Shown one piece after another: positions 773-52,600 of a stretch of 64,000 bases of DNA. The notes beneath the pieces are model-generated. The model was given only the letters and a program-made list of their open reading frames with translations. It did not search any database and was not told the origin of the DNA. The translations under genes were made by a program, and so were the position numbers. The stretch's first letter is position 1. The number at the start of each line of letters is the position of its first letter. Location of the stretch: positions 19,406,001 to 19,470,000 of the forward strand of contig NW_025964372.1 in assembly GCF_023055435.1 (NCBI RefSeq). Direction: 5' to 3'. This stretch comes from Haliotis rufescens (lineage: Eukaryota).

Positions 773-1745
773 ACCACTACTACTACTGCTGCTACAACCA
801 CTACTGCTACAACTACTGATGCTGCTACCACAACTGCTACAACTACTGCTTCTGCTACAACCACTACTGCTGCTGCTGCTACCACTACTGCTGCCGCTAC
901 AACCATTACTGCTACTACAACTACTGCTGCCGCTGCTGCTACAACTACTGCTGCTACAACTACTGCTGCTGCTAAAACCACTACTGCTACAACTACTGCT
1001 GCTGCTGCTACCACTACTACTGCTGCTAAAACCACTACTGCTACATCCACTACTGCTGCTGCAACCACTACTACTGCTGCTAAAGCCACTACTGCTGCTA
1101 AAACCACTACTGCTACAACTGCTGCTGCTACCACTACTGCTACAACCACTACTGCTGCTGCTGCAACCACTGCTGCTACAACAACTACTGCTACAACCAC
1201 TACTGCTGCTGCTACAACCACTACTGCTGCTGCTGCTACAACAACTACAACTGCTGCTGCGACAACCACTACTGCTGCTGCTACAACCACTACTGCTGCT
1301 GCTACAACCACTACTGCTGCTGCGACAACCACTACTGCTACTGCTACAACCACTACTGCTGCTGCTACAACCACTACAGCTGCTGCGACCACTACTGCTG
1401 CTACAACCACTACTGCTGCTACAACCACTACTGCTGCTGCTACAACCACTACTGCTACTACAACTACTGCTGCTGCTACCACTACTGCTACAACTACTGC
1501 TGCTGCTACAACCACTACTGCTGCTGCTACAACCACTACTGCTGCCGCTACAACCATTACTGCTGCTGCTACAACTACTGCTGCTGCTACAACTACTGCT
1601 GCTGCGACAACCACTACTGCTGCTGCTACAACCACTACTGCTGCTGCTACAACAACTACTGCTGCTGCGACAACCACTACTGCTGCTGCTACAACCACTA
1701 CTGCTCCTGCTACAATCACTGCTGCTGCTGCTACGACTACTCTGA
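773..1745. repeat. Cryptic trinucleotide repeat (ACT/GCT/ACC/ACA), about 970 bp
   Basis: Uninterrupted triplet-phase low-complexity tract. It generates the poly-Val/Ala and poly-Leu ORFs in the track; the frame starting at 773 reads Thr/Ala. Confidence 0.95.
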
Positions 1746-3960: not shown

Positions 3961-4232
3961 AATGACAGACCGTCGTCACATAGCTGCAGTTTTGCTTTAT
4001 GCTGCGTAGGGTGCGAATCTGTTAAGAGGGCAACCTCGTTAGTTCTTGCTTCCGTGTTGTTTAGCGAGCACTAAGAACTGATTTGAATTTAATCAAACTG
4101 ACTTGGCCACATCTTCCAGAGTGACAAAGGCGAATAATATATTTTTTTTTCTTTTCACTTTGACCGATGACGCAAATTTACTGATATGGAGTTCTATTTT
4201 TTTATATATTGTAAATATTAATGTTGCTGGAC

Positions 4233-4970
4233 TGCAACGTGAATCAACAGGTCAACCAGTCGATGTATGGATGAAACATTGCCCGTGCGACGTGAATCAA
4301 CTGGTCAACCAGTCGCTGTATGGATGAAACATTGCCAGTGCGACGTGAATCCACTGGTCAACCAGTCGATGTATGGATGAAACATTGCCCGTGCGACGTG
4401 AATCCACTGGTCAACCAGTCGCTGTATGGATGAAACATTGCTCGTGCGACGTGAATCAACAGGTCAACCAGTCGCTGTATGGATGAAACATTGCTCGTGC
4501 GACATGAATCAACAGGTCAACCAGTCGCTGTATGGATGAAACATTGCTCGTGCGACGTGAATCCACTGGTCAACCAGTCGATGTATGGATGAAACATTGC
4601 TCGTGCGACGTGAATCAACAGGTCAACCCGTCGCTGTATGGATGAAACATTGCTCGTGCGACGTGAATCAACAGGTCAACCAGTCGCTGTATGGATGAAA
4701 CATTGCTCGTGCGACGTGAATCAACAGGTCAACCAGTCGATGTATGGATGAAACATTGCTCGTCCGACGTGAATCCACTAGTCAACCAGTCGCTGTGTGG
4801 ATGAAACATTGTCCGTGCGACGTGAATCAACAGGTCAACCAGTCGCTGTATGGATGAAACATTGCTCGTGCGACGTGAATCAACTGGTCAACCAGTGGCT
4901 GTGTGGATGAAACATTGCTCGTGCGACGTGAATCAACAGGTCAACCAGTCGCTGGGTGGATGAAACACTG
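4233..4970. repeat. 53-bp minisatellite, about 14 copies
   Basis: Unit GTGCGACGTGAATCAACAGGTCAACCAGTCGCTGTATGGATGAAACATTGCTC; ggatg recurs at 4269 and 4322. Confidence 0.95.
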
Positions 4971-5125
4971 CAAACCTACTTCCGACATTATTGGCCGTTT
5001 GGATCTAATCGGCTGGTCCGTTTTCACAAATGTATTTTTTACTTAATTGATAAATTACAAAACCGATTCATATGACAGTTATTAACACTGATTACATTTG
5101 ATCAAACTTAACCAAATCTGGTTCA

Positions 5126-6447
5126 TCACAGTGAGCTGCTTACCCGCTTAGTCTTGTACAGCTCCAGTGAGCACTGATACACACTTTCCCCATTTCTCAA
5201 CATATCTACACAAAAACGGTCTGGTTCCTTTTCGTCTTCCCACAACTCAAGTTCAAGGTCATCCCCACAGTTACATTCTTTTCTGTACCACATGAAAGCA
5301 GATTTGAGGTTTAACGGTCGCAGAGCAGAACCCGCGTTGGTTTGACTTTTCTCCCTTTTAACTAAACCATCACAACAATATTTCAAATAGTTTGTAAAAT
5401 TCAGATGGAAGTTAGCGTCCGTATCACTGAAAGGGACTTCCCCTACTAACACCTTGCTTACACGTGATTGGTCAGACGGCCTCTCTAGAGCGTGGAATCT
5501 CATTGGCTCGCCTGTTCCACACAGGTGCCCGTATGTATTCTTCCACTCCTGGGGAATCTCAATCGGCTTTCGAAACGTGGTATCTAGTAGTATTATCTGA
5601 CTTCTAACTCGTGCCAATGGAATGCCTCCCGCCTTCATTGCTGTCTCTATGACGAACGTGCTCCTCTCGACGTTGTTGATGTTGCTGTCTAGACACAGAG
5701 GGGCCTTCACGACACCCTCATCATACAGTTTTTCGTGAAACTCCGCCTTTGAAGTGACGATAAATGAATGATATTTCTGGTAGAGTTTATACAGTCCGAG
5801 CATGGAGTCCCTGCCGTCAGCTGGGTGTAGGAGACACGATTGTGTGGAGTCCATCGCGTTCACCACGCTCCACGGCTGCGGGCACGCTGTGAATAGAGAG
5901 GTGAAGATGAAATAGGGTCTCGAACTTTTAAGATTACTGCACTTATTATAGTGACATGCATGTACTTGTGTGTGTGCCTGCGTGTGCGCGTGTGTTGCTG
6001 GCTGCTTGTAATAGTCCGGTCTAATGCCGGTTTTATGTGATAGCCCACTGAGATACCATACCGTAGTTGGTCATGGAAACCCCACGCTGACACAATATAC
6101 TGACACCGAGTCGACTTGTCCTTGACTTATCCCCTTATGCCGAACGCCAGATCTGGTAACAAGTACAATTAATAACGTGTTTAAGTAGGACGCGCCGGGG
6201 ATCGAACCACCGACAAACGCTCTATCCACTAGACAACGAGCTAACGAACGCTGCGATAATCAATATAATGAACTACTACAGTACACAGTTGAGGCTCGTG
6301 GATAATCGATGTTTGAACAGGGAGGGATTCAACGCCACTTTAAGCATAACTTCAGTTACATCATCACGTGTCAGTTTGAGGAAGTGGGGTTTAACGTCGC
6401 GTCCAAGATTATTGTACTTATATAGCGACGTGCATGCACTTACGTGT

Positions 6448-6484
<37 letters not shown>

Positions 6485-9400
6485 CTGCTTGTACTAGTCG
6501 GGACTGATGCCGATTTATAGTGCTAGCCCACTGAGATAGTATGTCGCAGTTGAACATGAATATCCCACACAGTATACTGACTCCAAGCCGACCAGTCCTT
6601 GTTTTAGCCCAATAATGCCGAGCTCCAGACAGGGTAACAACAACTACCATCTTTTAATGTCTTTTGGTATGACGCGGCCGGCGATCGAACCCCAGATCTT
6701 CCGCTCTCCGAGCAGACCCTCTACCACTAGACCACGGAGGCGGTCTGAAGTGTGAGGAAAGCCACGCAGTCATATCACATTTTGTTACGATTCCTATTTG
6801 AAAATTATAAATTGTACCATACAGTGCATACGACATTAGACACATTCTTCCTGGACTCACAGTGCGCGTCAAAGGCTGTGTAGGGCAGGCCAGGAATGAT
6901 AACTCGTCCACAGTTCGGCGCCGGGAAGATTCTTTCATATCCAAGCTGTTTAATAATTCTGAAAAATAGAAGATTGTAAGCTCACACGCTTAGAAATATA
7001 TAGACTTTATTAGGTCACTCAACCACATTAACATGACATGTGACTAAATAGCTAAACGTTGTTATTATTAAGTATTTTCATGGGTTTAAATAGTCTCAAA
7101 ATCACAGTGGCACATATATATAGTAATAATTAAATAAGTGGAGTAAGATTGAACACAGTTTTAATTGGCTAGCGCTTTCAACTCGTACCACGTGCGAGTC
7201 CCATCAGGAATGATGAATGGCCTGATGAGACTCGTACGTGGTACTAGTTGAAAGCGATAGCCAATTAAAACTGTGTTCAATCTTACTCCACTTATTCAAT
7301 TATTACTATATTGTGCCTGAGAGTTTACTTTACTGTGCTTTATATATATTATTATTATTATTACTTGGTCTAGCTGTGTCTGTTTTGTGAACCATCTCCA
7401 ACCCCCTCCCCCTTCTTTCTCGGGGACTTGGTGTCATGGTATCCCGATCACTGGTTTGACCGGTCCATATTCGATTCTTTACAGGCCACTGGGTTCGATT
7501 CCCGTCCGCGTAATACCAAAAGAAGTTAAAAGATGATACTTGTTGTTATCCTGCCTGGCGCTCGGGCTAAAACAAGGACTGGTCGGCTCGGGGTCGGTAT
7601 ATACTGTGTCTGAGTTGGGTATTCATGTTATAGTGAGTGAGTGAGTGAGTTTGATTTTACGCCGCTTTTAGCAATATTCCAGCAATATCACGGCGGGGGA
7701 CACCAGAAATGGGCTTCACACATTGTACCCATGTCGGGAATCGAACCCGGGTTTTCAGCGTGACGAGCGAACGCTTTAACCACCAGGCTACCCGACCGCC
7801 CCTCATGTTATACTGCGGCATGGTATCTCAGTAGGCTAGCACTATAAAATGAGCATTAGTCCGGACTAGTAAAAGCAGCCACATACACACAGGCATGCAC
7901 GTCGCTATATAAGTGCAATAATCTTGGACGCGACGTTAAACCCCATTTCACCTCACCTCACCTTTCCCTTTACCAGGAACCGGATTCTATTAAAGGGTGC
8001 CTCAGCTACAGCTAATGATTTACTCCCATCATGTTTGGAAGCATCCTCTCCATGGCCCGCATTTCGGGTTACCTATACTGTAACCCTTGGATCCAACCCA
8101 TGGTTCTCGCGATCCCAAATTATCGGCCCTTGATTTCCTTTGGCCGATTTGATTTGCTACGCAACTCAGAATGCGAGTACAAGCCAGCCTCAATGTCGGG
8201 TTGGCCATGTCAACATTGCGGCCAGTGCCATTGATACGATAGAGTTTGCGAGATATTCAACATTGAAAAACTGTGTGACACGCCAAAGAAAGCCCATTTC
8301 AAGGGAAATTGTATTAATAATAAATAATAAAGTCCATTTCTTCAGCGCCATTTCCGTCTACGTAGTCGCCCATAGCGCCTCACACAGGGTCATAGACACA
8401 TCTAAAGAGATAAGTCTTTAGTTTTTTGTCTTGAAAGTGTCCAGAGTTGGAGATTGCCTAATTTCCACTGGAAGGGAATTCCAGAGCACAGATGCAGTGT
8501 GAGCAAAAGTACTGTTGCCGAATGCTTTGAGTGAGACCATAGGGACACTAAACTGGAGTTTATGTGCTGATCTGAGATCTCGTGCTGGCTGGTGTAGGGT
8601 AAGAAGTTCACTCAGATAGGAAGGTGCTGTACTATAGTAGCACTGGTATGCAATGCACACGACTTTGTATTCAATCCCAGATCTTAATTGAAGCCAGTGT
8701 AATGATTTTAATAAAGGAGTGACATGTGCACGCTTATTTCGTCTACATATCAATCTGGCAGCAGCATTCTGCACACGTTGCAATTTGCTACATAGATCCT
8801 GTTTGATATTAATAAGCAGACTGTTAGCATAGTCCAACCTGGATAGGATAAGTGATCTCACGAGCTGATGTGCCGCATCATATGTCAACATGGGTTTTAT
8901 CTGACTGATATTTCGTATGTGGAAGTAGCAACTTTTGCAGATATTGTTTACTTGACAATCCATGGTCAGGTTTTGGTCAATGATGACTCCAAGGTCTTTG
9001 ACAGTCAAAGAAAAGGGGATGTCAACTCCATCAACAGTCAAGAATGATTTGGATATTGATGCAACAGATCGGCTACTCCCAGTGAGTATGACCTCGGTCT
9101 TATCAGGTTTTATTGTATCATTGTATTATATACACACCGCCGAGAGAAATGCGAACCATGGAAACATAAAGGCGTATGTACGTAAAGAAGAGATGCTTCT
9201 GATGTGTACCGGCCCGTGAAGACCCGATTGGTTGGTTGGTTGGTTGGTTTGATGTTTAACGCAATATCAGCAATGTCCCATTCCGGGAACGCTGTTAACA
9301 TTCTGCCAACCCTAACTTTACTATTGGGTCAGTTGACGGTGAACACAAAATATGGATTGACACTTGATATAGGCTGTCTTGTTGGAAGCCTACAAATTAA

Positions 9401-10432
9401 TAGCATGAACTATCTTGACTGAGTTATTCTTCTAGGGGCAGATTTCAAAAATATATATGTTACAGTCAATGTGTAAAATGTGATTCACTTACGCAATTTA
9501 CAATCTGCCTAAATATGTCTGTCATTTTACAAATTGACTCAAAATTAAGTCCAATCATATGACTGACTGACCAAACATTGCTAAGGAGGTCACAACGGCT
9601 CAAAAACATCACAGTCGACTTATTGTGATAAGATTAAAATAAAATAAATTATATATACATTGACGTCGGTTTTCTTTTAATCCTGGGGCGGTGGGGTAGC
9701 CTTGTGGTTAAAGCGTCCGCTCGTCACGCCTAAGAATCGGGTTCGATTCCCCACATAGGTACAACGTGTGAAGTCCATTTCCGGTGTCCCCCGCCGTGAT
9801 ATTGCGGCAATATTGCTAACAGCGGCGTTAAACCTCACTCACTCTTTTTATCCTATGAATTTTAGTCACATGGTTATGAAATTAAGCATCAAACTGTTTA
9901 GAATTCGTTATCATGATAAATAAATGGAAACTTGAGATAAAATGATTGAACTATAAAAGCTTTTTGTAAATTGCCTTCATGATAAATAAATGGAAACTTG
10001 ATATAAAATGACTGAACTATTTAAGCTTTTTGTAAATTGCCTAAGTGAAAATTTCAGTCATTGTACACATTGACTAATATATATTTCGCACTGGGAAGCG
10101 GACACTTCCGTCTTGGAATTAATCCCTGTCGTATACGCTAACATGGGGTGCTTATTTTAATGATTCCAACACTTACAGACCGCCGTCATATAGATGGAAT
10201 ATTGCGGAGTTAAACGAGAAATACGCAAAACAAACATAAACAGAACCTTTAATGGAAACATTACGGTACAGCGTGACCTCGTTCCCTCACCGTCGAGAAC
10301 AATCTATCGTGTTGTACGCGCCAGTGTTGAGAAAATCGGTCTGATATAGGTGGCACATTATGGTATTTATATCGACAAGCTAATAGAGTGTTTTTGTATG
10401 TATGTTAGTTACCTTGAAAAGCCTGTTGCCAT
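5126..10432 (-). CDS. Double hotdog-fold, acyl-ACP thioesterase-like protein (292 aa, 3 exons)
   Basis: Exons 10432-10413, 6958-6861 and 5886-5126; GT-AG, phases 2 and 1 match, 879 nt total. Motifs: GLPYTAFDAH (N-terminal hotdog), SQIILLDTTFRKPIEIP, SDTDANFHLNFTNY (DxDxNxHxN), YRKEC; C-terminus KRVSSSL. Exon 1 is the least certain part. Confidence 0.8.
5905..6235 (-). mobile_element. SINE family D (Meta/MESC-domain-like), degenerate copy
   Basis: B-box (ggggatcgaacc on +), tagcccactgagatacc core and shared 3' tail; similar to the copies at 6370 and 7490. Confidence 0.65.
6370..6745 (-). mobile_element. SINE family D (tRNA head, Meta/MESC-like body) with internal (GT)n
   Basis: tRNA-like head (cgatcgaacccc...ctctaccactagaccac on +), body ataccaaaagac...gactggtcggct...gctagcactataaa on the - strand, (GT)n at 6448-6482. 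Confidence 0.75.
7109..7317. repeat. About 100-bp-arm inverted repeat of Penelope-type terminal repeats carrying hammerhead motifs
   Basis: 7109-7208 is nearly the exact reverse complement of 7221-7317, with a 12-nt spacer. Confidence 0.9.
7218..7263 (+). ncRNA. Minimal type I hammerhead ribozyme motif
   Basis: TGGC-CTGATGA-GACTCGTACgtgGTACTAGTT-GAAA-GCGA-TA-GCCA. Stem I TGGC/GCCA, core CUGAUGA and GAAA, stem II, short stem III (GCGC in the mirror copy), UA cleavage site. Confidence 0.7.
7490..7965 (+). mobile_element. SINE family D interrupted by a family A SINE
   Basis: ggttcgattccc B box, then body; the sequence resumes after 7812 and ends ...ggacgcgacgttaaaccccatttcacctcacctcac. Confidence 0.75.
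7633..7802 (-). mobile_element. tRNA-derived SINE family A, full length, 10-bp TSD
   Basis: TSD TCATGTTATA at 7623-7632 and 7803-7812; A and B boxes; (ACTC)n tail. Confidence 0.9.
8315..9112 (-). mobile_element. 5'-truncated L2/Crack-clade LINE (RT C-terminus and 3' UTR)
   Basis: ORF 8418-9041 has VKDLGVIIDQNL, SRLDYANSLL, LQRVQNAAARLI and HVTPLLKSLHWL. 3' gcgc stem-loop and (TTA)n-type tail near 8320. Confidence 0.85.
9684..9845 (+). mobile_element. tRNA-derived SINE family A
   Basis: ggggcggtggggtagcc...ggttcgattcccc...gcggcgttaaacctcactcactc, flanked by an approximate TSD (cttttaatcct/ctttttatcct). Confidence 0.85.
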
Positions 10433-11940
10433 CTTTGAGAAGCGAAACCGCGGGATAAACAATGGCGTGTGTTCAGCTCCGCGTATCTGGGTCAAAGGTA
10501 AAAGTTCATGTATATGTCACTGAGGCTCATGGGATCGATGAGGCACAGCCAACACATCTGTTCCAGTAAACTCCCATGTATCGGGGTATTCCACGCTCGT
10601 ATACCCTGTTATATACGTCATCAAGCGATTCACTGTTTATATCGATGCTAATATAGTCCAGTGCTAGGAACAGTTGAAAAGTTCGATGTAGGATAAAACT
10701 CTTAAATCCTTATTTTTTCTAAATTAAAAAAAATAAAATGAACATCTTCGTAGGATTTACACGAGCTGCGTGTAAAATAGTCAAATTGACATATTCAATA
10801 TATCTTCGATTTGCAAAGCCAGGGATATTATTAAATAGCCTGAGACCATTAGTCACCATAGCTTTGTTTTGGAAGTGTCCCCGTTTTTCCAATCTCTTAG
10901 CACACAATTTCACCCACACAGGAGAGTAATAACTCCGATATTTGCACATATGTGCATTGTAGATATTCTCAATGTTGATTGGTCAGCCAGTACTTCATTG
11001 TTAACGACAATAACGTCATCCATTGTTTATGACGTCACAAACTAAGTACGTTACGTCATCTGAAGAACAACAATATATTTCTTCCATTTTAGCTCGAAAC
11101 ATGCTACAAAAGTCAGTAATATACAGAATAACCTACTAAACACTCGCCTAAGGCTCAGGATTAACGCCATTTATTTACTTGGGTAGATAATCCATAATTG
11201 GTCGTAGCTCGTTGGTTATTGTCTAATTATTAGTATGGTTCCATTCGAATCATGCCCCAATCAGAGGTCTAATTTGTTTTGTTTAACGATTCACTCAGCT
11301 AGCTGCATGGCGATAGCCTATAAATAATGGAGGCTAGACCAGACAATCCAGTGATTGATATCGCGGGCAACGATCCTCGCCGTCGGGGTACGCTGCCACG
11401 CCATCAACCAACTCACCAAGCAAGACCACCCGATCAATGATGTTGCATCTTACGGACTAGCAGTGAGGTTGTTAAGGACCAATTATGATATGGAACTCCA
11501 AAAATAGTCGCTTCCTACGACTGGCAGTGGGATGCTGGCGATACATTCTACCTCAGGAGCCCAACCGGGGAATTCTTGCATAGTTCATTCAGCTGATTGA
11601 GAAAGTGCAGTCTTGTGGTTTTAGACAGATGGCTCTTCCTGCTATAGATACAACTAACCTTTGTCAGCTCCATGCACGTCTGTGGTCCTCATATAACTGA
11701 AATATAGCTTGCCTGCTGAGTATGTCAACATTCACTCACTCCATGTGGCTCTGCTTGTTTGTTTATTTGTTGTTTAACGCCGCAATCAGCAATATTCCAG
11801 CTATATGGCGGCGGTCTGTAATTAATCGAGTGATTGATTTCAGAAGCATCGATCCACGCAGTTGGGATACGATGGCATGCATCAACCAAGTCAGCGAGCC
11901 TGACTACCCAATCCCGTTAGTCGCCTGTTAGGGCAAGCTT

Positions 11941-27740: not shown

Positions 27741-28090
27741 TACAGGCTCAAAGCTGCGCTTCAACAGCAAGTACCGTACAAAGAAAGTCATTGAGGCTAT
27801 AACAGAGGTTGAAAATCTCACAAATTCTTGCACGCGATTTACTTGCAAACATCTCAAATAAAGAAAAGGTTTGTATTCTGTCACACTGTTGTGTTGAATC
27901 TTGATTATGTTATGTAATTCCTAAGGGCTTCTTCCATATACACTGAAAACAGTTGTCTACGAAATTAGTATAGAAACATTAAACCCTATATGGGCCCCAA
28001 ACCCAAACTATTAATAGATACTAAACATTCTAGTTCCGGTTCCGGCTAGGAAGTCAACTCGTGTTGTATCTCAGAAACGTGTGTCTGAAA

Positions 28091-31000
28091 ATGGCAATTC
28101 CAAAACGGAAAATGGGAAGATTACTTAAAATAAGTGGTGTAATTGTGGTTTTAGCATTAGTACTTTTGATATGCCGCTCTTTAATAAGGAAAAAGCCAGT
28201 CCTCGATATAGATCTGAATCTTTTTGACTTTAGACACAAGTTGGGCCATGTTTATTTTGACTACAGCCAGAGAACCATCACTTTCTCCGAACATAATGAT
28301 GGTGACTCATATTTAACAGTAACTTTTCCTCAAGAACTACAAAGTGCGCCTGACTTGACTTGTGATTCGAAAGATTCAAACAGCCTTTGTTTAAAATGGC
28401 TGCACAGAGGAAAGTTGGAGATAAAAGAGTCCATTTCTCAAAATGCAAGGTGTTATAATATTGTTTGGACGCCCAAGAACAATGGTTTTGTGCCCTATGA
28501 CTGTTTCCCTTTATCAGACGCCCACTGGTACGGGGGAAGTGCACATTACACACATGACTGGCCAGTAGAACAGCTGAGTGTCCCGCTACAACCCTACATA
28601 TCATCACCTCTCCACGTTTCCAGGGAAACGGGCAAAGAAGTGTTTGGTCCTGTTCTTGAGCGATACTGGTTCAGTTCAAAAGGAGTAGGGGTGTATGTTG
28701 ACAATTCTGTTCCTTTGCATGTGGGCATCAACGACAACAATAGTAACAAGATGTGTTTTAAAGCATCGTATATCACAAACCGTTTCCAGAATCCTGAAAA
28801 TCTTCCACCAATTTTGCGGTATTTTGTGTGTAAGGCTAATAATGCTAAAGAAATCCATGAACATATGTATAAAAAATGTTTTAAAGTTCCCACTCGCATA
28901 CCAGATGAATTGAGAATGCAAAATCCCATGTGGACATCTGCGAAATTAAGAGACCAAACTAAACAATCAACTGTGTTAACTTACACAAATGAAATCAGCA
29001 AAAATAAATTTCCTAAAGGTTTCTTTGAACTTTATGGCAGATATTTCAGAGCATATGGAGATTATAATTTTGATGATAAAAAGTTTCCAAATGCACATCA
29101 AATGATTGGAGAACTGAAGTCCTCTGGTTTTGAAATCGGAACATGGGTCACCCCTTATATGGATCTTAAGTCACTCCATGCTGAAACTGGGAAGAAAAAT
29201 GGATATTTTGTTCATGATGCTGACTCGGAGACATTGCCAGCCAGCATAGCTTGGAATGGCAATGTATCTTTGTTTGTTGACTTTACAAATGAACAAGCTT
29301 ACAAGTGGTTCCATGATATACTGGAAAATATACAGAAAGATTACAGAAATACTGCTTTTGTATTTGATGGAGGCGAGTCTTCGTCCTTTGATCTCAGTCA
29401 GTCAATGAAGACTTTTATTCACAATCCGTGTGAGTACAGCACTAAGTATGTGGAACTTGCTGCCAGTCTGGGAGACAAAGGGACAGTGAAGGTTGGATAC
29501 CAATCCCAGCAGTATGCCATGTTTGTCGAGATCACAGACAGACAGTCCAGCTGGGACTACAACAGTGGACTCAAGTCAATCATCCCGACTGTTCTAACTT
29601 ACGGTCTCCTCGGTTACCCTTTTATCAACCCTGGTCCTATTGGTGGAAGGGGAAGTTTTTCTCTGAAGCCGTTCAAAAATGAAAGTTTTGAATCCAAAAT
29701 TCTGCCCGAGTCCGAGCTGTATGTGCGATGGATGTTGCTGTCAACTTATTTACCCATCATGCAGTTCTCCTATGCCCCATGGGAATACAACAACGAAACA
29801 ACACTATTAGCTCTTCAACTTGTTCAATATCATCAAAATAAGGTCTTCCCACTACTAAAGGCTGCTGCGAAAGAAGCAGAAGTGACAGGTAATATGCTTG
29901 ATCAGTTTCGACAGTTCCATATATATGAGGGGGGTGCACGGGTGGCCCTGTCATCAAGGGCACTTCCATTTGCTATGTAGGGTTACATCCCTTGTGCAAA
30001 CCCCAAACCTATGATTGTGGGTTAAAAGCCCAGTTCGCTCTAGTTATGTTTCTAAGTTTGTAAGCATCATACGAAATAAGTGGAACAATGTTCAAAACGG
30101 CAGTAAGTCCAACTCACACATTAGGACAAATTTAGTTGGTTTACAGATTTTTATTCAACAAATACTTGAACACAGGAGAGTAAAAAATAAAAACTTTCTG
30201 AACTCAGTATGCTCAATATGCTCAAAGACTAAATTTGTTCACCTGTGAAGATCCGGGCTAGAATATGTCTTCAGCAACCCATGTTTGTTGTAAAAGGTGA
30301 AAATGCTTGTTGTAAGAGTCGACTAATGGGATCAGGTGGTCAGAATCTCTGACTTCACATCCCAATGGTGTAGATCGATGCTCATGATATCAATCACTGG
30401 ATTGTTTAGTCCAGACGTGATTATTTACAGACTGCCGTTGCTGAGTGCGACGTTAAACAACAAACAAACACACAGACAAAGAAAACTAAATTTTGTTACT
30501 GCATTGTACCTATTGACACATTTTCTTGTTTGGGTTATTATAATTTGAGACTAAACATGCTAAAACCTGGAGAGAACATACACTGTGAAAATGTTAAAGT
30601 AATTATATATATTGGGATAATAGGCTACTGAGACAAATATTTCCTATTATGCAATTTGTAAATTTCTGTTGAAGTTTTGACTTGACACAAAACTACTGGT
30701 GCATCTGCAAAATAAGTAATAAAGTTGGTCTTGCTTTATGATGAGATGTAATGGTTGATTGTTACAAGTAAAGGCTGTGTGTTCAATACCAGGGATTATC
30801 AAGGTTTTTAAAGTTAGTGCCCCTGGCAGGCAAATTGGGAAAAACATTGTTACTTTGTTTGAAATAGGGATTTTTTAAAGTTATTTTTTTCTTAAATTCA
30901 GATGTTTGCCTATTGTAACATTGAATTTTGAGATTGCATTCAATGCGATCATCATGATAATATGTAACTAAGCATAACAACCTCTTCCTATTTATTTGTC

Positions 31001-49651: not shown

Positions 49652-52600
49652 TCACGATGACTGAGCACAATTCAATTGCCACGGTTTCCGTTTATTCGGA
49701 ACAATATTTTCAGCGAATGTCAGATTTGGAAACAAGGAGATGGCATTAGCAATTATCTTTGAAAGACCTTGTTTTACCTTGTACCATACAATCTCTGCAA
49801 CCAGTATCAGGAAACTGCAGATCAGCCCAATTCCCACAGCAAAGAACATACTCTGGATCTTGGTGAGTGACACAGCTTTAGGGAAACTCTCTACTGGACA
49901 TTTGACCTTCGGGGCAGACTGAAGCCATTCTTGAAAGGTACGCTGCAGGATACCACTGTCGCGTAGATGATACATCCTGGCAGTGACAATGATTTACATA
50001 GGATTACATCTCGAGGATTACCAAACAAAAGAACGCTAACGGTCTAATGGTACAATGCAAAGCGTTGTCAAAATACACAGAAATCATCAGATGAAAACAG
50101 GGATTCTATTTATTGATGAAAAAGAAAATGACTTGACTATCGTTTTATAGGGGCAGTCAGATGGTACGACTAGTTTATTGCATCGGGTCAACAGCTATTC
50201 CAAGCCTTGTAATATTTACATATCCATTTTACAACGATATGGCAAACCCTATAAATAGAGTAAATGTGTAAAATAGTATAAATTGTCAGACCGGTAAATA
50301 TTCATAATTTTAAATGAGGAAACGTCAAAATTAAACGTTAATGCAAGGGAATACTTCTGTGACAATTTGAAAGTAAATTCTCATTTTAATTTCGCATGGT
50401 GCGATGAGGTAATTAATTAAGTATTATTTAATTATTAATTAAATAAGTATTATGTACACTCATTATATTCGTCAATCTATTAAGTGAAGAATGATCGATT
50501 CAGACCTACGTGTTTTCCAGATCCTGTTTGAAAGGAGAAGACTTTGGAAGATGGAAGGCTGTGTAGGAATGTCCAAATTTAGTGTCGAGTACTTGTAATT
50601 TGCAATCAGCATAGCTTAAAGGGACCATTACTGTGCCCGAGATGAAAGCGTATTTTCCCTCATGGACTCTTTGCAGGTGCTTGGTGATGTTGATACCGAG
50701 TACGTCAGGATCTGTGACCGATAAGTCCCGGACTCGTTGTACGACACCCTTGATATCTGATTGCTTAGTATTCTGAAAATCATTGTGGAGTGGTCACATG
50801 TCTTAACACTAATCTAAATCTCTTGTAATGCAAATGTACAATAATGTACTTTTATGTATGTACAATAATTCGAACTGCGTTGCACATACCTATGCCTTGA
50901 ACATTGCATGTAATCTATGTTCTTATGGGAAACAATCACGTGTATAGTGTAGACCTGTCAACCGTTCCAATCGTATCAAGATGATCCATTTTCAAGCCCC
51001 GTTTTTAATGAGATATTGTAGGTATTTGTCATCCAACACTATATTAAATATACCATGTACATCGACAGAACTGAAGCGAAATGGAAATCCTATTCGTCTA
51101 CAGAATGAAGACACAGGTGACATGGATTTCAGCTTCAAGCAAGTTGATAAGGGCACTAGCACATGTACTGACCGTGAAGACCCGTGAAGAGAATAGGTCT
51201 TCAGAAACCCATGATTGCTGTAAGAAGCGACTAATGGGACCGGATGGTCGGGCTCGGTGACTTGGTTGACGCATGTCAAATAGTGGATTGCCTGGTCCAG
51301 ACCGCCGCGATATATACTAGCCACATAATGAAACTGTGCACGGAGAAAATATATTCTGGATTGAAATACAACACAGCAAGAACAAAATGATGCAGACGCT
51401 GTAGCAGCTGAATGATCGGACCATAAGAAAATGTCAACGGGACCTGAACAACAACTGTTACGATGACGTCAGAAGATCAAAATGGAGTAGGGGGTCATAC
51501 GACAAAGTCACAAAATCAATAACGGGTATGGCCACCCTGTGCGTGAATCACAGCAGTGCATCGCCGACGCATGGAGTCCACCAAATGGGCATGGAAGGCC
51601 TGGGGAATGGCCTGCCATATCCTTCTCAAATCCTGTGCCAAGTCACGGACGTTATCTGGAGGATGTGGAAGACGACGCAGACGGCGCTCCATTTCATCCC
51701 ACACAGGCTCTATTGGGGAGAGATCTTGAGAAATTGCAGGCCATGGCAGTAACATGACATTGTTATGGTGAAGGAAATCCATTGCGACCCTAGCCGTGTG
51801 AGGACGAGCGTTGTCCTGTTGAAATGTCAATCCCGGGCTATGACGTTGCAGGAAAGGAATGACCACAGGCCTCAGAATCTGATCTCTGTAGCCAACACCG
51901 GTGAGATTGCCCTGAACAACCACCAAAGGGGTTCGGTGCCGTGCTGTTATCCAACCCCAAATAATCACAGAGCCACCTCCAAAACGATTCCTCTCCACAA
52001 TACAGTTGCGTGCATAACGTTCTCCCAAACGCCGGTAGACACGTTGGCGCCCGTCACTGTGGGAAATGTTGAACCTCGATTCATCTGCAAAGACAACATT
52101 TCTCCACCATATTCGAGGTTGGCGAACATGATTTCGACACCATCTTAGACGGTTGACTCGATGACGGTGTGTCAGGATGGGAGGTATGGCAGGGCGTCGT
52201 GGTCGAATCCCGTACTGACGTAAACGATTCCTGACAGTGTTGGGATGGATACGGCGCAGTCCAGGAATTGTCTGGGACGTCGTTCCTGCCGTTTGGAACC
52301 TGTGTCGGAGATGTGTAACCCGAATCCATCTGTCCTGTCTTGGCGTCGTTACTCGGGGACGTCCTGAACGTGGGTGGTCGGCAACGTGATTAGTGTTCTG
52401 ATAACGCCTCACCAATGCCGATATCGTGTTACGATGGCATTGGACATGTGTTGCCACCTGTTGTTGCCTCATTCCCGCTCGGATCATTCCAATGGCTTCA
52501 TGACGCTGTGCAGCTGTCAATCTTGGCATGATTTGCTTGTGATATGCTTGTGTCTGCGCCTGAGAAGTTTTGAATTTTTGAATGACCACAGATCACGCTT

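What the first reader, a model, noticed from the sequence alone, without database searches (positions are those of the whole stretch)
5126..10432. Intron-containing animal gene for a plant/bacterial-type acyl-ACP thioesterase, with a possible peroxisomal signal
Seen: the 292-aa spliced product has DTDANFHLN and YRKEC, the N-terminal hotdog motif IILLDTTFRKPIEIP, and ends KRVSSSL. Known: FatA/FatB-type acyl-ACP thioesterases use DxDxNxHVN plus YRREC for catalysis. Animal FAS uses an alpha/beta-hydrolase thioesterase, and the characterised animal hotdog thioesterases are ACOT/THEM types. SSL with upstream basic residues is a non-canonical PTS1. Inference: a catalytically complete FAT-like thioesterase, either anciently retained or horizontally acquired and intronised, possibly controlling acyl chain length in peroxisomes or for a PKS/FAS product.
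Basis: partly seen in the sequence, partly recalled or inferred. Interest (0 to 1): 0.8.

Follow-up and report, generated by a model that had tools for sequence, protein, structure and literature searches.

The report
Abalone FAT-like double-hotdog thioesterase gene
This is a real, transcribed three-exon abalone gene for an enzyme shaped like the plant and bacterial acyl-ACP thioesterases; it belongs to an unstudied marine-invertebrate family whose members often carry a peroxisome address tag, so it more likely cleaves acyl-CoA in peroxisomes than ends fatty-acid synthesis.

Summary
A three-exon minus-strand gene (ATG 10432, stop 5126-5128) encodes the 292-aa product with every quoted motif. 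It is Haliotis rufescens LOC124142480, annotated "uncharacterized protein". Spliced contigs from two public runs confirm the exon 2-exon 3 junction; exon 1 rests on depth arithmetic.

With a 122-sequence alignment, AlphaFold2 gives pLDDT 95. All top structural matches are acyl-ACP thioesterases (FatA, FatB, 2ESS, 2OWN, 4GAK; Z 22-23), above LnmK (Z 18.5) and ACOT7 (Z 17). D196, N198, H200 and E243 sit where FatB has D281, N283, H285 and E319; two of the four rest on my own numbering.

It is not a clean sequence-level member. The Pfam N-domain model PF01643 fails, and the C-domain model PF20791 is borderline.

The family has at least 447 representative clusters. All 24 named ones I looked up are molluscs, an annelid, echinoderms or amphioxus. 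Abalone has at least 15 copies. 39 of 156 family proteins end in a canonical PTS1, against 0.4 expected, on both deep branches of the tree. This protein's clade conserves only the weak -SSL.

Best reading: a peroxisomal or dual-located acyl-CoA thioesterase with a FAT-type fold. Recent gene transfer is rejected. A role with FAS or PKS is untested. No paper on animal members was found, and the scan's own notes hold no other.

The parts
10413..10483 (-). Exon 1: 5'UTR of about 50 nt plus the first 20 nt of CDS (ATG at 10432-10430; MATGFS + 2 nt), followed by donor GTAACT
   Evidence: Sequence. Contig depth in bins 10236-10422 and 10423-10600 fits an exon spanning 10413 to about 10483, and about 70 unaligned letters of contigs X2/9 and X4/16 lie beyond exon 2. 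The 5' end is approximate.
6959..10412 (-). Intron 1 (3454 nt, GT..AG), filled with repeats: tRNA-like SINE copies, a 207-aa ORF at 8418-9041, and a palindrome at 7109-7317
   Evidence: very high contig depth at 7431-7991, 9675-9861 and 10049-10235, typical of dispersed repeats
6861..6958 (-). Exon 2 (98 nt; residues R7 to S40, both split codons)
   Evidence: Contigs X2/9 and X4/16 align to exactly 6861-6958 with 0 differences.
5887..6860 (-). Intron 2 (974 nt, GTGAGT..CACAG), with a (GT)n microsatellite at 6444-6483 and SINE-like repeats
5022..5886 (-). Exon 3: CDS 5886-5129 (residues 40-292), stop TGA 5128-5126, 3'UTR to about 5022-5086
   Evidence: Contigs end at 5022 (X1), 5056 (X4), 5086 (X2) and 5068 (X9), and all start at 5886 except X9.
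5552..5596 (-). IILLDTTFRKPIEIP (residues 137-151): last strand of the N-terminal hotdog and the conserved (T)RKP...P linker start
   Evidence: The family consensus VDxxTRKPxxxP aligns with UcFatB SVLMNTRTRRLSTIPDEV. P147 is conserved in 95 of 122 and P151 in 114 of 122.
5399..5425 (-). Catalytic motif DTDANFHLN (residues 194-202) at the start of the C-terminal hotdog
   Evidence: Aligned by HMMER to FatB DLDVNQHVNN and Chlamydomonas FAT DMDMNGHINN. D196 is conserved in 119 of 122, H200 in 120, N202 in 98, N198 in 47. I equate D196, N198 and H200 with FatB D281, N283 and H285 from my own knowledge of the numbering.
5273..5287 (-). YRKEC (residues 240-244), holding the conserved Glu E243
   Evidence: Aligned to Chlamydomonas FAT FKAEC. 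E243 is conserved in 112 of 122. I equate it with FatB E319 from my own knowledge.
5129..5137 (-). C-terminal tripeptide SSL: a weak, non-canonical PTS1 candidate
   Evidence: Conserved in 5 of 7 Haliotis clade members. It fits the broad consensus [ASCNPHTG][RKHQNSL][LMIVF] used in PMC8919083, which calls SSL a weak PTS1 in zebrafish Pipox.

Best explanation
The locus is the transcribed three-exon Haliotis rufescens gene LOC124142480.

Shown here:
- Its 292-aa product is one chain of two fused hotdog domains, with the architecture of the acyl-ACP thioesterases (TE14, FatA/FatB and bacterial relatives).
- The N-terminal hotdog ends in the RKP...P linker.
- The C-terminal hotdog carries the catalytic set D196/N198/H200 plus E243 (followed by C244).
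- The protein belongs to an uncharacterised family seen so far in marine and other invertebrates (molluscs, an annelid, echinoderms, amphioxus) and expanded to at least 15 copies in abalone.
- Canonical PTS1 tripeptides (SKL, SRL, AKL and the like) are spread over both deep branches of the family tree.

Inferred:
- It hydrolyses a fatty-acyl thioester, with Asp/His/Glu activating water or attacking the thioester, as proposed for FatB.
- The ancestral location is the peroxisomal matrix, which has no ACP. The physiological substrate is therefore most likely acyl-CoA. The enzyme would release free fatty acid and CoA from beta-oxidation substrates or intermediates, as ACOT8/Pte1 do with a different double-hotdog scaffold.
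- This paralogue's clade keeps only the weak signal -SSL. It is probably imported inefficiently (dual cytosol and peroxisome), or is cytosolic.
For: Gene and transcript.

Fold:
- AlphaFold2 with 122 homologues gives pLDDT 95.1 and pTM 0.92.
- Foldseek ranks 1-42 (every row shown) are acyl-ACP thioesterases, E 1e-16 to 6e-13; the next class starts at 3e-10.
- VIA-align gives Z 22.1-23.2, rmsd 2.7-3.3 A over 232-254 residues for FatA, Lemna FAT, 4GAK, 2OWN, 2ESS, 9MQF and 5X04. LnmK scores 18.5, MFE-2 hydratase 17 and ACOT7 17.1.

Sequence:
- The family profile hits UcFatB 5X04 at E 3e-13, 9MQF at 3e-12 and 2ESS at 2e-11, with alignments running across the inter-domain linker. Single-hotdog YbgC proteins match twice, once per half.
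- Catalytic columns align and are conserved: D196 119/122, H200 120/122, E243 112/122.
- The protein language model's nearest non-animal clusters are bacterial and plant acyl-ACP thioesterases.

Peroxisome:
- 39 of 156 family proteins end in [SAC][KRH][LM], against 0.40 expected from composition. 79 of 156 fit the broad consensus, against 6.9 expected.
- Canonical signals number 18 in each of the two deep halves of the tree.
- One abalone paralogue ends in SKL and three end in SSL.
- -SSL is kept in 5 of 7 proteins of this clade although the residues before it vary.

Age: named members come from Haliotis, Aplysia, Batillaria, Arion, Potamilus, Mytilus, Pinctada, Mya, Tegillarca, Owenia, Branchiostoma, Diadema and Amphiura. 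All 12 abalone paralogues I inspected, and all 15 genome matches, share one large terminal exon starting near profile position 17-37.
Against: - No enzyme assay exists for any member of the family.
- PF01643, the N-terminal acyl-ACP thioesterase model, does not match this protein or anything in the genome. PF20791 is at threshold: 21.2 bits for the exon product and 20.7 for the full protein, against a cut-off of 21.
- N198, the FatB N283 equivalent, is Asn in only 47 of 122 members and Tyr in 56.
- This protein replaces two nearly invariant family residues, G113 by E and S116 by T. That could change or weaken its activity.
- -SSL is not a canonical animal PTS1. This protein has Ser at position -4, where three clade members have Arg.
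- Among the 12 abalone paralogues inspected, 1 ends in SKL, 3 in SSL and 1 in SEL, which also fits the broad consensus; the other 7 have no PTS1-like end. Much of the family in this species may therefore be cytosolic.
- The PTS1 counts include related sequences and machine-predicted proteins with uncertain ends.
Confidence: 0.6

Rival explanations
1. A true acyl-ACP thioesterase. The enzyme would act in trans on the ACP domain of the animal type I FAS, or of the thioesterase-less mollusc FAS-like polyketide synthases (AFPKs). It would set chain length or offload the product.
For: - The nearest structures and sequence profiles are all acyl-ACP thioesterases.
- The family is mollusc-rich and expanded in abalone.
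- Abalone has many KS-containing loci.
- Seven of the 12 abalone paralogues inspected have no PTS1-like end, so they could be cytosolic.
Against: - Canonical PTS1 signals lie on both deep branches of the family, which points to a compartment without ACP.
- None of the 40 listed KS matches (contigs C445, C124, C179, C201, C1) lies on a contig holding a thioesterase paralogue (C334, C35, C557, C101, C235, C594). Animal pathway genes are rarely clustered, so this is weak evidence.
- No co-expression or biochemical data are available.
Confidence: 0.15
2. An active thioesterase that is not peroxisomal. In this clade -SSL would be a non-functional remnant, and the enzyme would work on acyl-CoA in the cytosol, or in mitochondria through its N-terminal helix.
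For: - SSL lies outside the canonical [SAC][KRH][LM] set.
- Position -4 is Ser in this protein.
- Many paralogues have clearly lost the signal.
- Residues 2-12 form a basic helix, RIIKQLGYER.
Against: - SSL is retained in 5 of 7 clade members at 56-72% identity while neighbouring residues change.
- SSL fits the broad animal consensus and is read as a weak PTS1 in zebrafish Pipox (PMC8919083).
- The N-terminal helix is modelled at block pLDDT 76-95 and residues 15-28 align to the FAT fold, so the region is not a disordered presequence.
Confidence: 0.2
3. A recent horizontal transfer from a bacterium or alga into abalone, or assembly contamination.
For: The closest characterised relatives are bacterial and plant enzymes. 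The described range of TE14/Fat is plants and bacteria only (PMC516016 table, PMC3176148).
Against: - The gene has two spliceosomal introns full of abalone repeats and lies on a chromosome-scale contig.
- There are at least 15 paralogues with the same terminal-exon layout.
- Homologues occur in four animal phyla.
- A pattern scan of 185,579 bacterial and archaeal species genomes found no close relative (low sensitivity).
- Identity to solved bacterial and plant enzymes is only 10-18%.
Confidence: 0.03
4. A double-hotdog protein with a different chemistry, such as an LnmK-like acyltransferase/decarboxylase or a hydratase, or a non-catalytic lipid binder.
For: LnmK (Z 18.5) and MFE-2 hydratase 2 (Z 17) share the overall fold. 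G113E and S116T are unusual in this protein.
Against: The thioesterase-type D/H/E columns are nearly invariant in the family and align with FAT and YbgC catalytic motifs. All acyl-ACP thioesterases score about 4 Z units above any other class.
Confidence: 0.05

Closest known systems
Acyl-ACP thioesterases FatA/FatB and bacterial relatives (ThYme family TE14; Pfam PF01643 + PF20791; PDB 5X04, 9HRR, 2ESS, 2OWN, 4GAK, 9MQF)
   Same: - One chain of about 250-300 residues made of two hotdog domains.
- Best structural matches: Z 22-23, rmsd about 2.8 A over about 245 residues.
- The D-x-N-x-H-x-N motif at the start of the C-terminal hotdog, and the [YF]-x-x-E-C motif about 45 residues later.
- Profile E-values of 1e-13 to 1e-7.
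   Different: - Only 10-18% identity.
- The N-terminal Pfam model PF01643 does not match.
- It is an animal nuclear gene with introns.
- There is no plastid transit peptide and no type II FAS context.
- Many family members carry a PTS1, which implies acyl-CoA rather than acyl-ACP substrates.
- The FatB N283 position is Tyr in about half of the family.
YbgC / 4HBT_2-type single-hotdog acyl-CoA thioesterases (Pfam PF13279; PDB 1S5U, 5KL9, 5BYU). Animal THEM6 carries this domain (my own knowledge).
   Same: This is the best Pfam hit (4HBT_2, E 2.5e-6). It shares the D-x-D-x-x-G-H-V-N-N-type motif, and each half of the abalone protein aligns to a YbgC-type chain. These enzymes use acyl-CoA, the substrate I propose here.
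   Different: Those proteins are about 130-160 residues with one hotdog and form homo-oligomers. Here two diverged hotdogs are fused, and only the second keeps the catalytic motif. The Pfam match covers only 27 residues.
ACOT8 / yeast Pte1 / E. coli TesB-type peroxisomal acyl-CoA thioesterases
   Same: Double-hotdog thioesterases. The eukaryotic members carry a C-terminal PTS1 and act on acyl-CoA in peroxisomes (my own knowledge, and the TesB-like row of the table in PMC516016). This is the functional analogue I propose.
   Different: A different hotdog subfamily with a different active-site layout. A TesB-type structure (4R9Z) ranks far lower (Foldseek E 9e-10 against 1e-16). No TesB/ACOT8-type Pfam family appears among the hits.
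LnmK bifunctional acyltransferase/decarboxylase (PDB 4HZN, 6X7L)
   Same: A double hotdog of similar size. It is the second-best structural class (Z 18.0-18.5).
   Different: 8-9% identity, rmsd 3.5-3.8 A, and a different chemistry. It had no sequence-level hit.

Membership tests
Acyl-ACP thioesterase (TE14; FatA/FatB/bacterial) | Single-chain double-hotdog fold superposable on solved members | tested here: met
   AlphaFold2 pLDDT 95.1. Foldseek ranks 1-42 are all acyl-ACP thioesterases. VIA-align gives Z 22-23 over 232-254 residues.
Acyl-ACP thioesterase (TE14; FatA/FatB/bacterial) | Catalytic Asp-x-Asn-x-His in the C-terminal hotdog plus the Glu of the YRRE(C) motif | tested here: met
   D196, N198, H200, E243 and C244 are present. 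D, H and E are aligned to FAT sequences by HMMER. In the family, D, H and E are conserved in at least 92% of members, and the Asn in only 39%.
Acyl-ACP thioesterase (TE14; FatA/FatB/bacterial) | Match to Pfam PF01643 (N-terminal domain) above the gathering score | tested here: not met
   No PF01643 hit for the exon-3 product or for P0001. Only 3 of 122 family members hit it at E<=1e-3. There is no match anywhere in the abalone genome at E<=0.01.
Acyl-ACP thioesterase (TE14; FatA/FatB/bacterial) | Match to Pfam PF20791 (C-terminal domain) above the gathering score | tested here: inconclusive
   21.2 bits for the exon product and 20.7 bits for the full protein, against a cut-off of 21. 59 of 122 family members match at E<=1e-3.
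Acyl-ACP thioesterase (TE14; FatA/FatB/bacterial) | Hydrolyses acyl-ACP of a type II FAS (plastid or bacterial setting) | not testable with these tools
   It is an animal gene. PTS1 signals in the family argue for a compartment without ACP. An enzyme assay is needed.
PTS1-targeted peroxisomal matrix protein | C-terminal tripeptide within canonical [SAC][KRH][LM] | tested here: not met
   This protein ends in SSL.
PTS1-targeted peroxisomal matrix protein | C-terminal tripeptide within the broad animal consensus [ASCNPHTG][RKHQNSL][LMIVF] | tested here: met
   SSL fits. The consensus, and SSL as a weak PTS1, are taken from PMC8919083.
PTS1-targeted peroxisomal matrix protein | Homologues carry canonical PTS1 far more often than chance | tested here: met
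   39 of 156 against 0.40 expected. The internal tripeptide rate is 0.0032. The signals lie on both deep branches of the tree.
PTS1-targeted peroxisomal matrix protein | PEX5-dependent import shown by experiment | not testable with these tools
   A reporter import or PEX5-binding assay is needed.
Known animal hotdog thioesterases (ACOT7-13, THEM2/4/5/6) | Detectable sequence orthology or similarity | tested here: not met
   The family profile found no ACOT or THEM chain among PDB sequences at E<=1. ACOT7 appears only as a fold match at Z 17.1 and 7% identity. THEM6 has no solved structure and its sequence could not be fetched, so a direct comparison was not made.

The most novel reading that the evidence does not exclude
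The mollusc-expanded family may supply the missing stand-alone chain-release enzymes for the thioesterase-less animal FAS-like polyketide synthases of molluscs. The paralogues without a PTS1 would work in the cytosol. The PTS1 paralogues would shorten or finish lipids or polyketides in peroxisomes. Animals would then have kept a type II-style, FAT-like trans-thioesterase alongside their type I megasynthases.
Probability: 0.1. Interest if true: 0.85.

Novelty: new variant of a known kind. Interest (0 to 1): 0.55.

Why it matters
The acyl-ACP thioesterase (FAT, TE14) fold is described in the literature as a plant and bacterial enzyme of type II fatty-acid synthesis (PMC516016, PMC3176148). Here the same scaffold, with conserved catalytic residues, turns up as a sizeable and completely uncharacterised animal family. 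It is found in molluscs, an annelid, echinoderms and amphioxus, with at least 15 copies in abalone. It carries peroxisomal targeting signals far more often than chance.

If the family does hydrolyse acyl-CoA in peroxisomes, marine invertebrates use a third, unrelated thioesterase type there, besides the alpha/beta-hydrolase ACOTs and the TesB-like ACOT8. That bears on how these animals handle their unusual dietary and endogenous lipids.

The family also gives concrete candidates for the unknown offloading step of mollusc polyketide synthases. FAT enzymes are workhorses of chain-length engineering, so a divergent animal clade that may accept CoA substrates could also be useful in biotechnology.

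Tried and rejected
- NCBIfam and single-sequence PDB searches of the exon-3 product gave nothing significant.
- The word-index homologue search found only Haliotis proteins. Repeating it with the 122-sequence alignment added almost nothing.
- AlphaFold2 with only 7 Haliotis sequences gave an unusable model (pLDDT 48.6). I replaced it with the 122-sequence run.
With P0001 alone it found no bacterial or archaeal relative. I therefore could not fetch bacterial or plant TE14 sequences, and I built no rooted tree of animal against bacterial and plant enzymes.
I could not inspect the genomic context of unnamed metagenome and Logan hits such as P0018 and P0034, so their organisms are unknown.
- The careful treekit search did not finish. 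I used the quick IQ-TREE tree.
- Four literature searches for animal acyl-ACP-thioesterase-like proteins found no paper on them.
Exons 2 and 3 were searched separately by reference. All full-length work used the database record P0001 returned.
- No N stretch was touched.
- Rejected readings: contamination or recent gene transfer (introns, repeats, paralogues, four phyla); an ACOT or THEM orthologue (no sequence match); a pseudogene (intact ORF, spliced transcripts, conserved catalytic residues).

Full report
**1. The observation**

The finding's coordinates hold a minus-strand gene of three exons.
- Exon 1 contributes ATGGCAACAGGCTTTTCAAG (10432-10413) and is followed by GTAACT.
- Exon 2 is 6958-6861, between TTTTTCAG and GTGAGT.
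- Exon 3 runs from 5886, after ATTCACAG, to the TGA at 5128-5126.

I translated the exons separately. They give IIKQLGYERIFPAPNCGRVIIPGLPYTAFDAH and CPQPWSVV...YKTKRVSSSL.

The exon-3 product is 100% identical to the 292-aa NCBI record 'uncharacterized protein LOC124142480 [Haliotis rufescens]' (P0001).

Full-length analyses used the database record P0001 that the search returned.

**2. Is it expressed?**

I laid the contigs of four public runs on 5000-10600. Two contigs (X2 record 9 and X4 record 16) cover 5086/5056-5886 and then jump straight to 6861-6958 with no mismatch. They carry about 70 further letters beyond that.

The depth in the bins on either side of 10413 equals contig depth times 10/187 and times about 60/178 for X1 and X2. 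X4 fits the second bin; its first bin reads about twice the expected value. That is what an exon 1 spanning 10413 to about 10483 would give.

Genomic DNA cannot produce these joins, and the genome holds no second identical copy. The exon 2-exon 3 junction is therefore seen directly in contigs. The exon 1-exon 2 junction is inferred from depth and from the length of the unaligned contig ends. The 3'UTR ends between 5022 and 5086.

The introns are full of dispersed repeats. Contig depth reaches the thousands to hundreds of thousands at 6496-6869, 7431-7991, 9675-9861 and 10049-10235. This is an ordinary resident animal gene, not a contaminant.

**3. What the protein is**

Direct database hits are weak.
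- Pfam 4HBT_2: E 2.5e-6, but over 27 residues only.
- Pfam Acyl-ACP_TE_C (PF20791): 21.2 bits against a cut-off of 21.
- The N-terminal acyl-ACP thioesterase model PF01643 gives nothing.
- NCBIfam and a single-sequence PDB search give nothing significant.

The word-index search found only seven Haliotis proteins. An exhaustive HMMER search with their profile found 447 representative clusters at E<=1e-3 and 145 at E<=1e-10.

With 122 of these as the alignment, AlphaFold2 went from an unusable model (pLDDT 48.6) to pLDDT 95.1 and pTM 0.92. The model has two hotdog domains, each a long helix wrapped by a sheet, joined by the segment around residues 141-182.

Structure comparison gives one clear answer.
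- Foldseek against the PDB puts only acyl-ACP thioesterases at ranks 1-42 (B. thetaiotaomicron 2ESS, Umbellularia FatB 5X04, Lemna FAT, Arabidopsis FatA, L. plantarum 2OWN, Spirosoma 4GAK, Chlamydomonas 9MQF), with E 1e-16 to 6e-13. Then there is a gap to 3e-10 for LnmK, MFE-2 hydratase and TesB.
- VIA-align gives Z 22.1-23.2 and rmsd 2.7-3.3 A over 232-254 residues for the same set. LnmK scores 18.5, hydratase 2 scores 17 and ACOT7 scores 17.1.
- The family profile also finds these enzymes by sequence: 5X04 at 3e-13, 9MQF at 3e-12, 2ESS at 2e-11. Those alignments run through the inter-domain linker. Single-hotdog YbgC-type chains match twice, once per half.

The printed alignments put the family's SDtDsykHtN on FatB NDLDVNQHVN and Chlamydomonas ADMDMNGHIN. 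They put the family's YkgE on Chlamydomonas FKAE(C). From my own knowledge of the FatB numbering, D196, N198, H200 and E243 of the abalone protein then correspond to D281, N283, H285 and E319.

Across the family, D196, H200 and E243 are kept in 119, 120 and 112 of 122 sequences. N198 is Asn in 47 and Tyr in 56.

At the level of sequence family, the protein is a divergent sister group rather than a clean member. PF01643 matches only 3 of 122 members and nothing in the abalone genome. One caveat is specific to this paralogue: it has E113 and T116 where 111 of 122 relatives have G and S.

**4. Who else has it**

Every one of the 24 named clusters among the 30 I looked up is an invertebrate animal:
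- Molluscs: Haliotis asinina, H. rubra and H. cracherodii, Aplysia, Batillaria, Arion, Potamilus, Mytilus, Pinctada, Mya, Tegillarca.
- Annelid: Owenia.
- Cephalochordate: Branchiostoma.
- Echinoderms: Diadema, Amphiura.

Some of these carry UniProt's automatic name 'Acyl-ACP thioesterase'.

The protein-language-model atlas shows four mollusc-dominated clusters (707, 114, 85 and 54 members) as nearest neighbours. Bacterial and plant acyl-ACP thioesterase clusters come next.

The abalone genome holds at least 15 paralogous terminal exons in clusters on contigs C334, C35 and C557, plus singles. The 12 that I inspected are all open. All 15 begin near the same profile position, so the exon layout is shared.

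A pattern scan of 185,579 bacterial and archaeal genomes found no close relative (low sensitivity).

Recent horizontal transfer and contamination are therefore excluded. The family is at least as old as the bilaterian ancestor, or it was acquired before that.

**5. The peroxisomal signal**

Of the 156 family proteins in hand:
- 19 end in SKL, 6 in SRL and 6 in AKL.
- 39 fit [SAC][KRH][LM], against 0.40 expected from the family's composition. The internal tripeptide rate is 0.0032.
- 79 fit the broad animal consensus [ASCNPHTG][RKHQNSL][LMIVF], against 6.9 expected.

On a quick maximum-likelihood tree, the canonical signals split 18 and 18 between the two deepest halves. Peroxisomal targeting therefore looks ancestral, with many later losses. 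Some apparent losses may be truncated gene predictions.

The query's own clade ends in -SSL in 5 of 7 proteins, at 56-72% identity, while the preceding residues vary (VSSSL, VRSSL, ISSSL, IRSSL). SSL is outside the canonical set. It is inside the broad consensus, and a zebrafish peroxisome inventory reads it as a weak PTS1 in Pipox (PMC8919083).

Within abalone, one paralogue ends in SKL, three end in SSL and one ends in SEL, which also fits the broad consensus. The other seven of the 12 I read have no PTS1-like end.

**6. How it most likely works**

Shown: the gene, its transcript, the FAT-type double hotdog, the conserved D/H/E, the animal family, and the PTS1 enrichment.

Inferred:
- The protein is a thioesterase.
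- Peroxisomes contain acyl-CoA and no ACP (my own knowledge). The family's physiological substrates are therefore acyl-CoAs.
- The enzyme would release fatty acids and CoA during peroxisomal beta-oxidation. That is the job done elsewhere by ACOT8/Pte1, on a different double-hotdog scaffold.
- For this paralogue I put peroxisomal import, possibly partial, at about even odds.

The main rival is a real acyl-ACP activity on FAS or on polyketide synthases. A recent paper makes this worth keeping. Mollusc FAS-like PKS clades 1-3 lack a thioesterase domain, and their offloading mechanism is mostly unknown (PMC10764717). Abalone has many KS loci. However, no listed KS match shares a contig with a thioesterase paralogue, and the PTS1 signals point elsewhere. 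I give this rival 0.15 as a reading of this gene. I give 0.1 to the broader novel case.

**7. Known or new**

The hotdog survey lists the Fat subfamily from Viridiplantae, Firmicutes and Bacteroidetes only (PMC516016). [quoted passage not shown] Four further searches found no paper on animal members.

Databases already hold the proteins, some with automatic domain names, and the gene itself is annotated. The novelty therefore lies in the interpretation: a FAT-fold thioesterase family of animals with peroxisomal signals. I rate it a new variant of a known kind, of moderate-to-good interest, with simple decisive experiments.

The scan's own notes hold no other finding of this family. A word search turned up only an unrelated PECR note and the intron palindrome.

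Noticed in passing
Rfam found no family at gathering score in 4000-11000. Even at E<=1, 7050-7380 gave no hammerhead family, only sub-threshold miRNA-hairpin hits at 7178-7251. The CTGATGAG and GAAAGC core words are visible in the sequence.
   Followed up: partly
window 4233-4971: A 53-bp tandem array of 13.9 copies at 93% identity, starting about 50 nt downstream of the gene's 3' end. Each unit carries a short ORF, which is probably meaningless.
   Followed up: no
window 28061-29980 (+): An uninterrupted 639-aa ORF with a glycoside hydrolase family 31 TIM-barrel domain (PF01055, E 7e-25). A single-exon GH31 gene is unusual in an animal genome. It could be a retrogene, a large exon, or an acquired gene.
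   Followed up: no
window 51516-52589 (-): A 357-aa ORF for a Tc1/mariner-type transposase (DDE_3, HTH_Tnp_Tc3_2, HTH_23).
   Followed up: no
window 7431-7991, 9675-9861 and 6496-6869: tRNA-like SINE copies in both orientations inside the introns. Contig depth reaches 8e5 in the runs laid. ARAGORN calls no tRNA there.
   Followed up: no
G000 contig C445, about 11.42-12.02 Mb and 14.98 Mb: A dense cluster of ketoacyl-synthase (PF00109) exon matches, suggesting roughly ten tandem FAS/PKS/AFPK-like genes in abalone. They are on a different contig from all the thioesterase paralogues.
   Followed up: no
window 779-1741: An 18/21-bp tandem repeat of about 50 copies (ACTACTGCTGCTGCTACAACC) that makes long ORFs on both strands with no Pfam match.
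   Followed up: no
P0031 (Branchiostoma floridae C3Z046, 571 aa): An amphioxus family member of twice the usual length, with three matched stretches and an -AKL end. It could be a tandem fusion of two double-hotdog units or a merged gene model.
   Followed up: no
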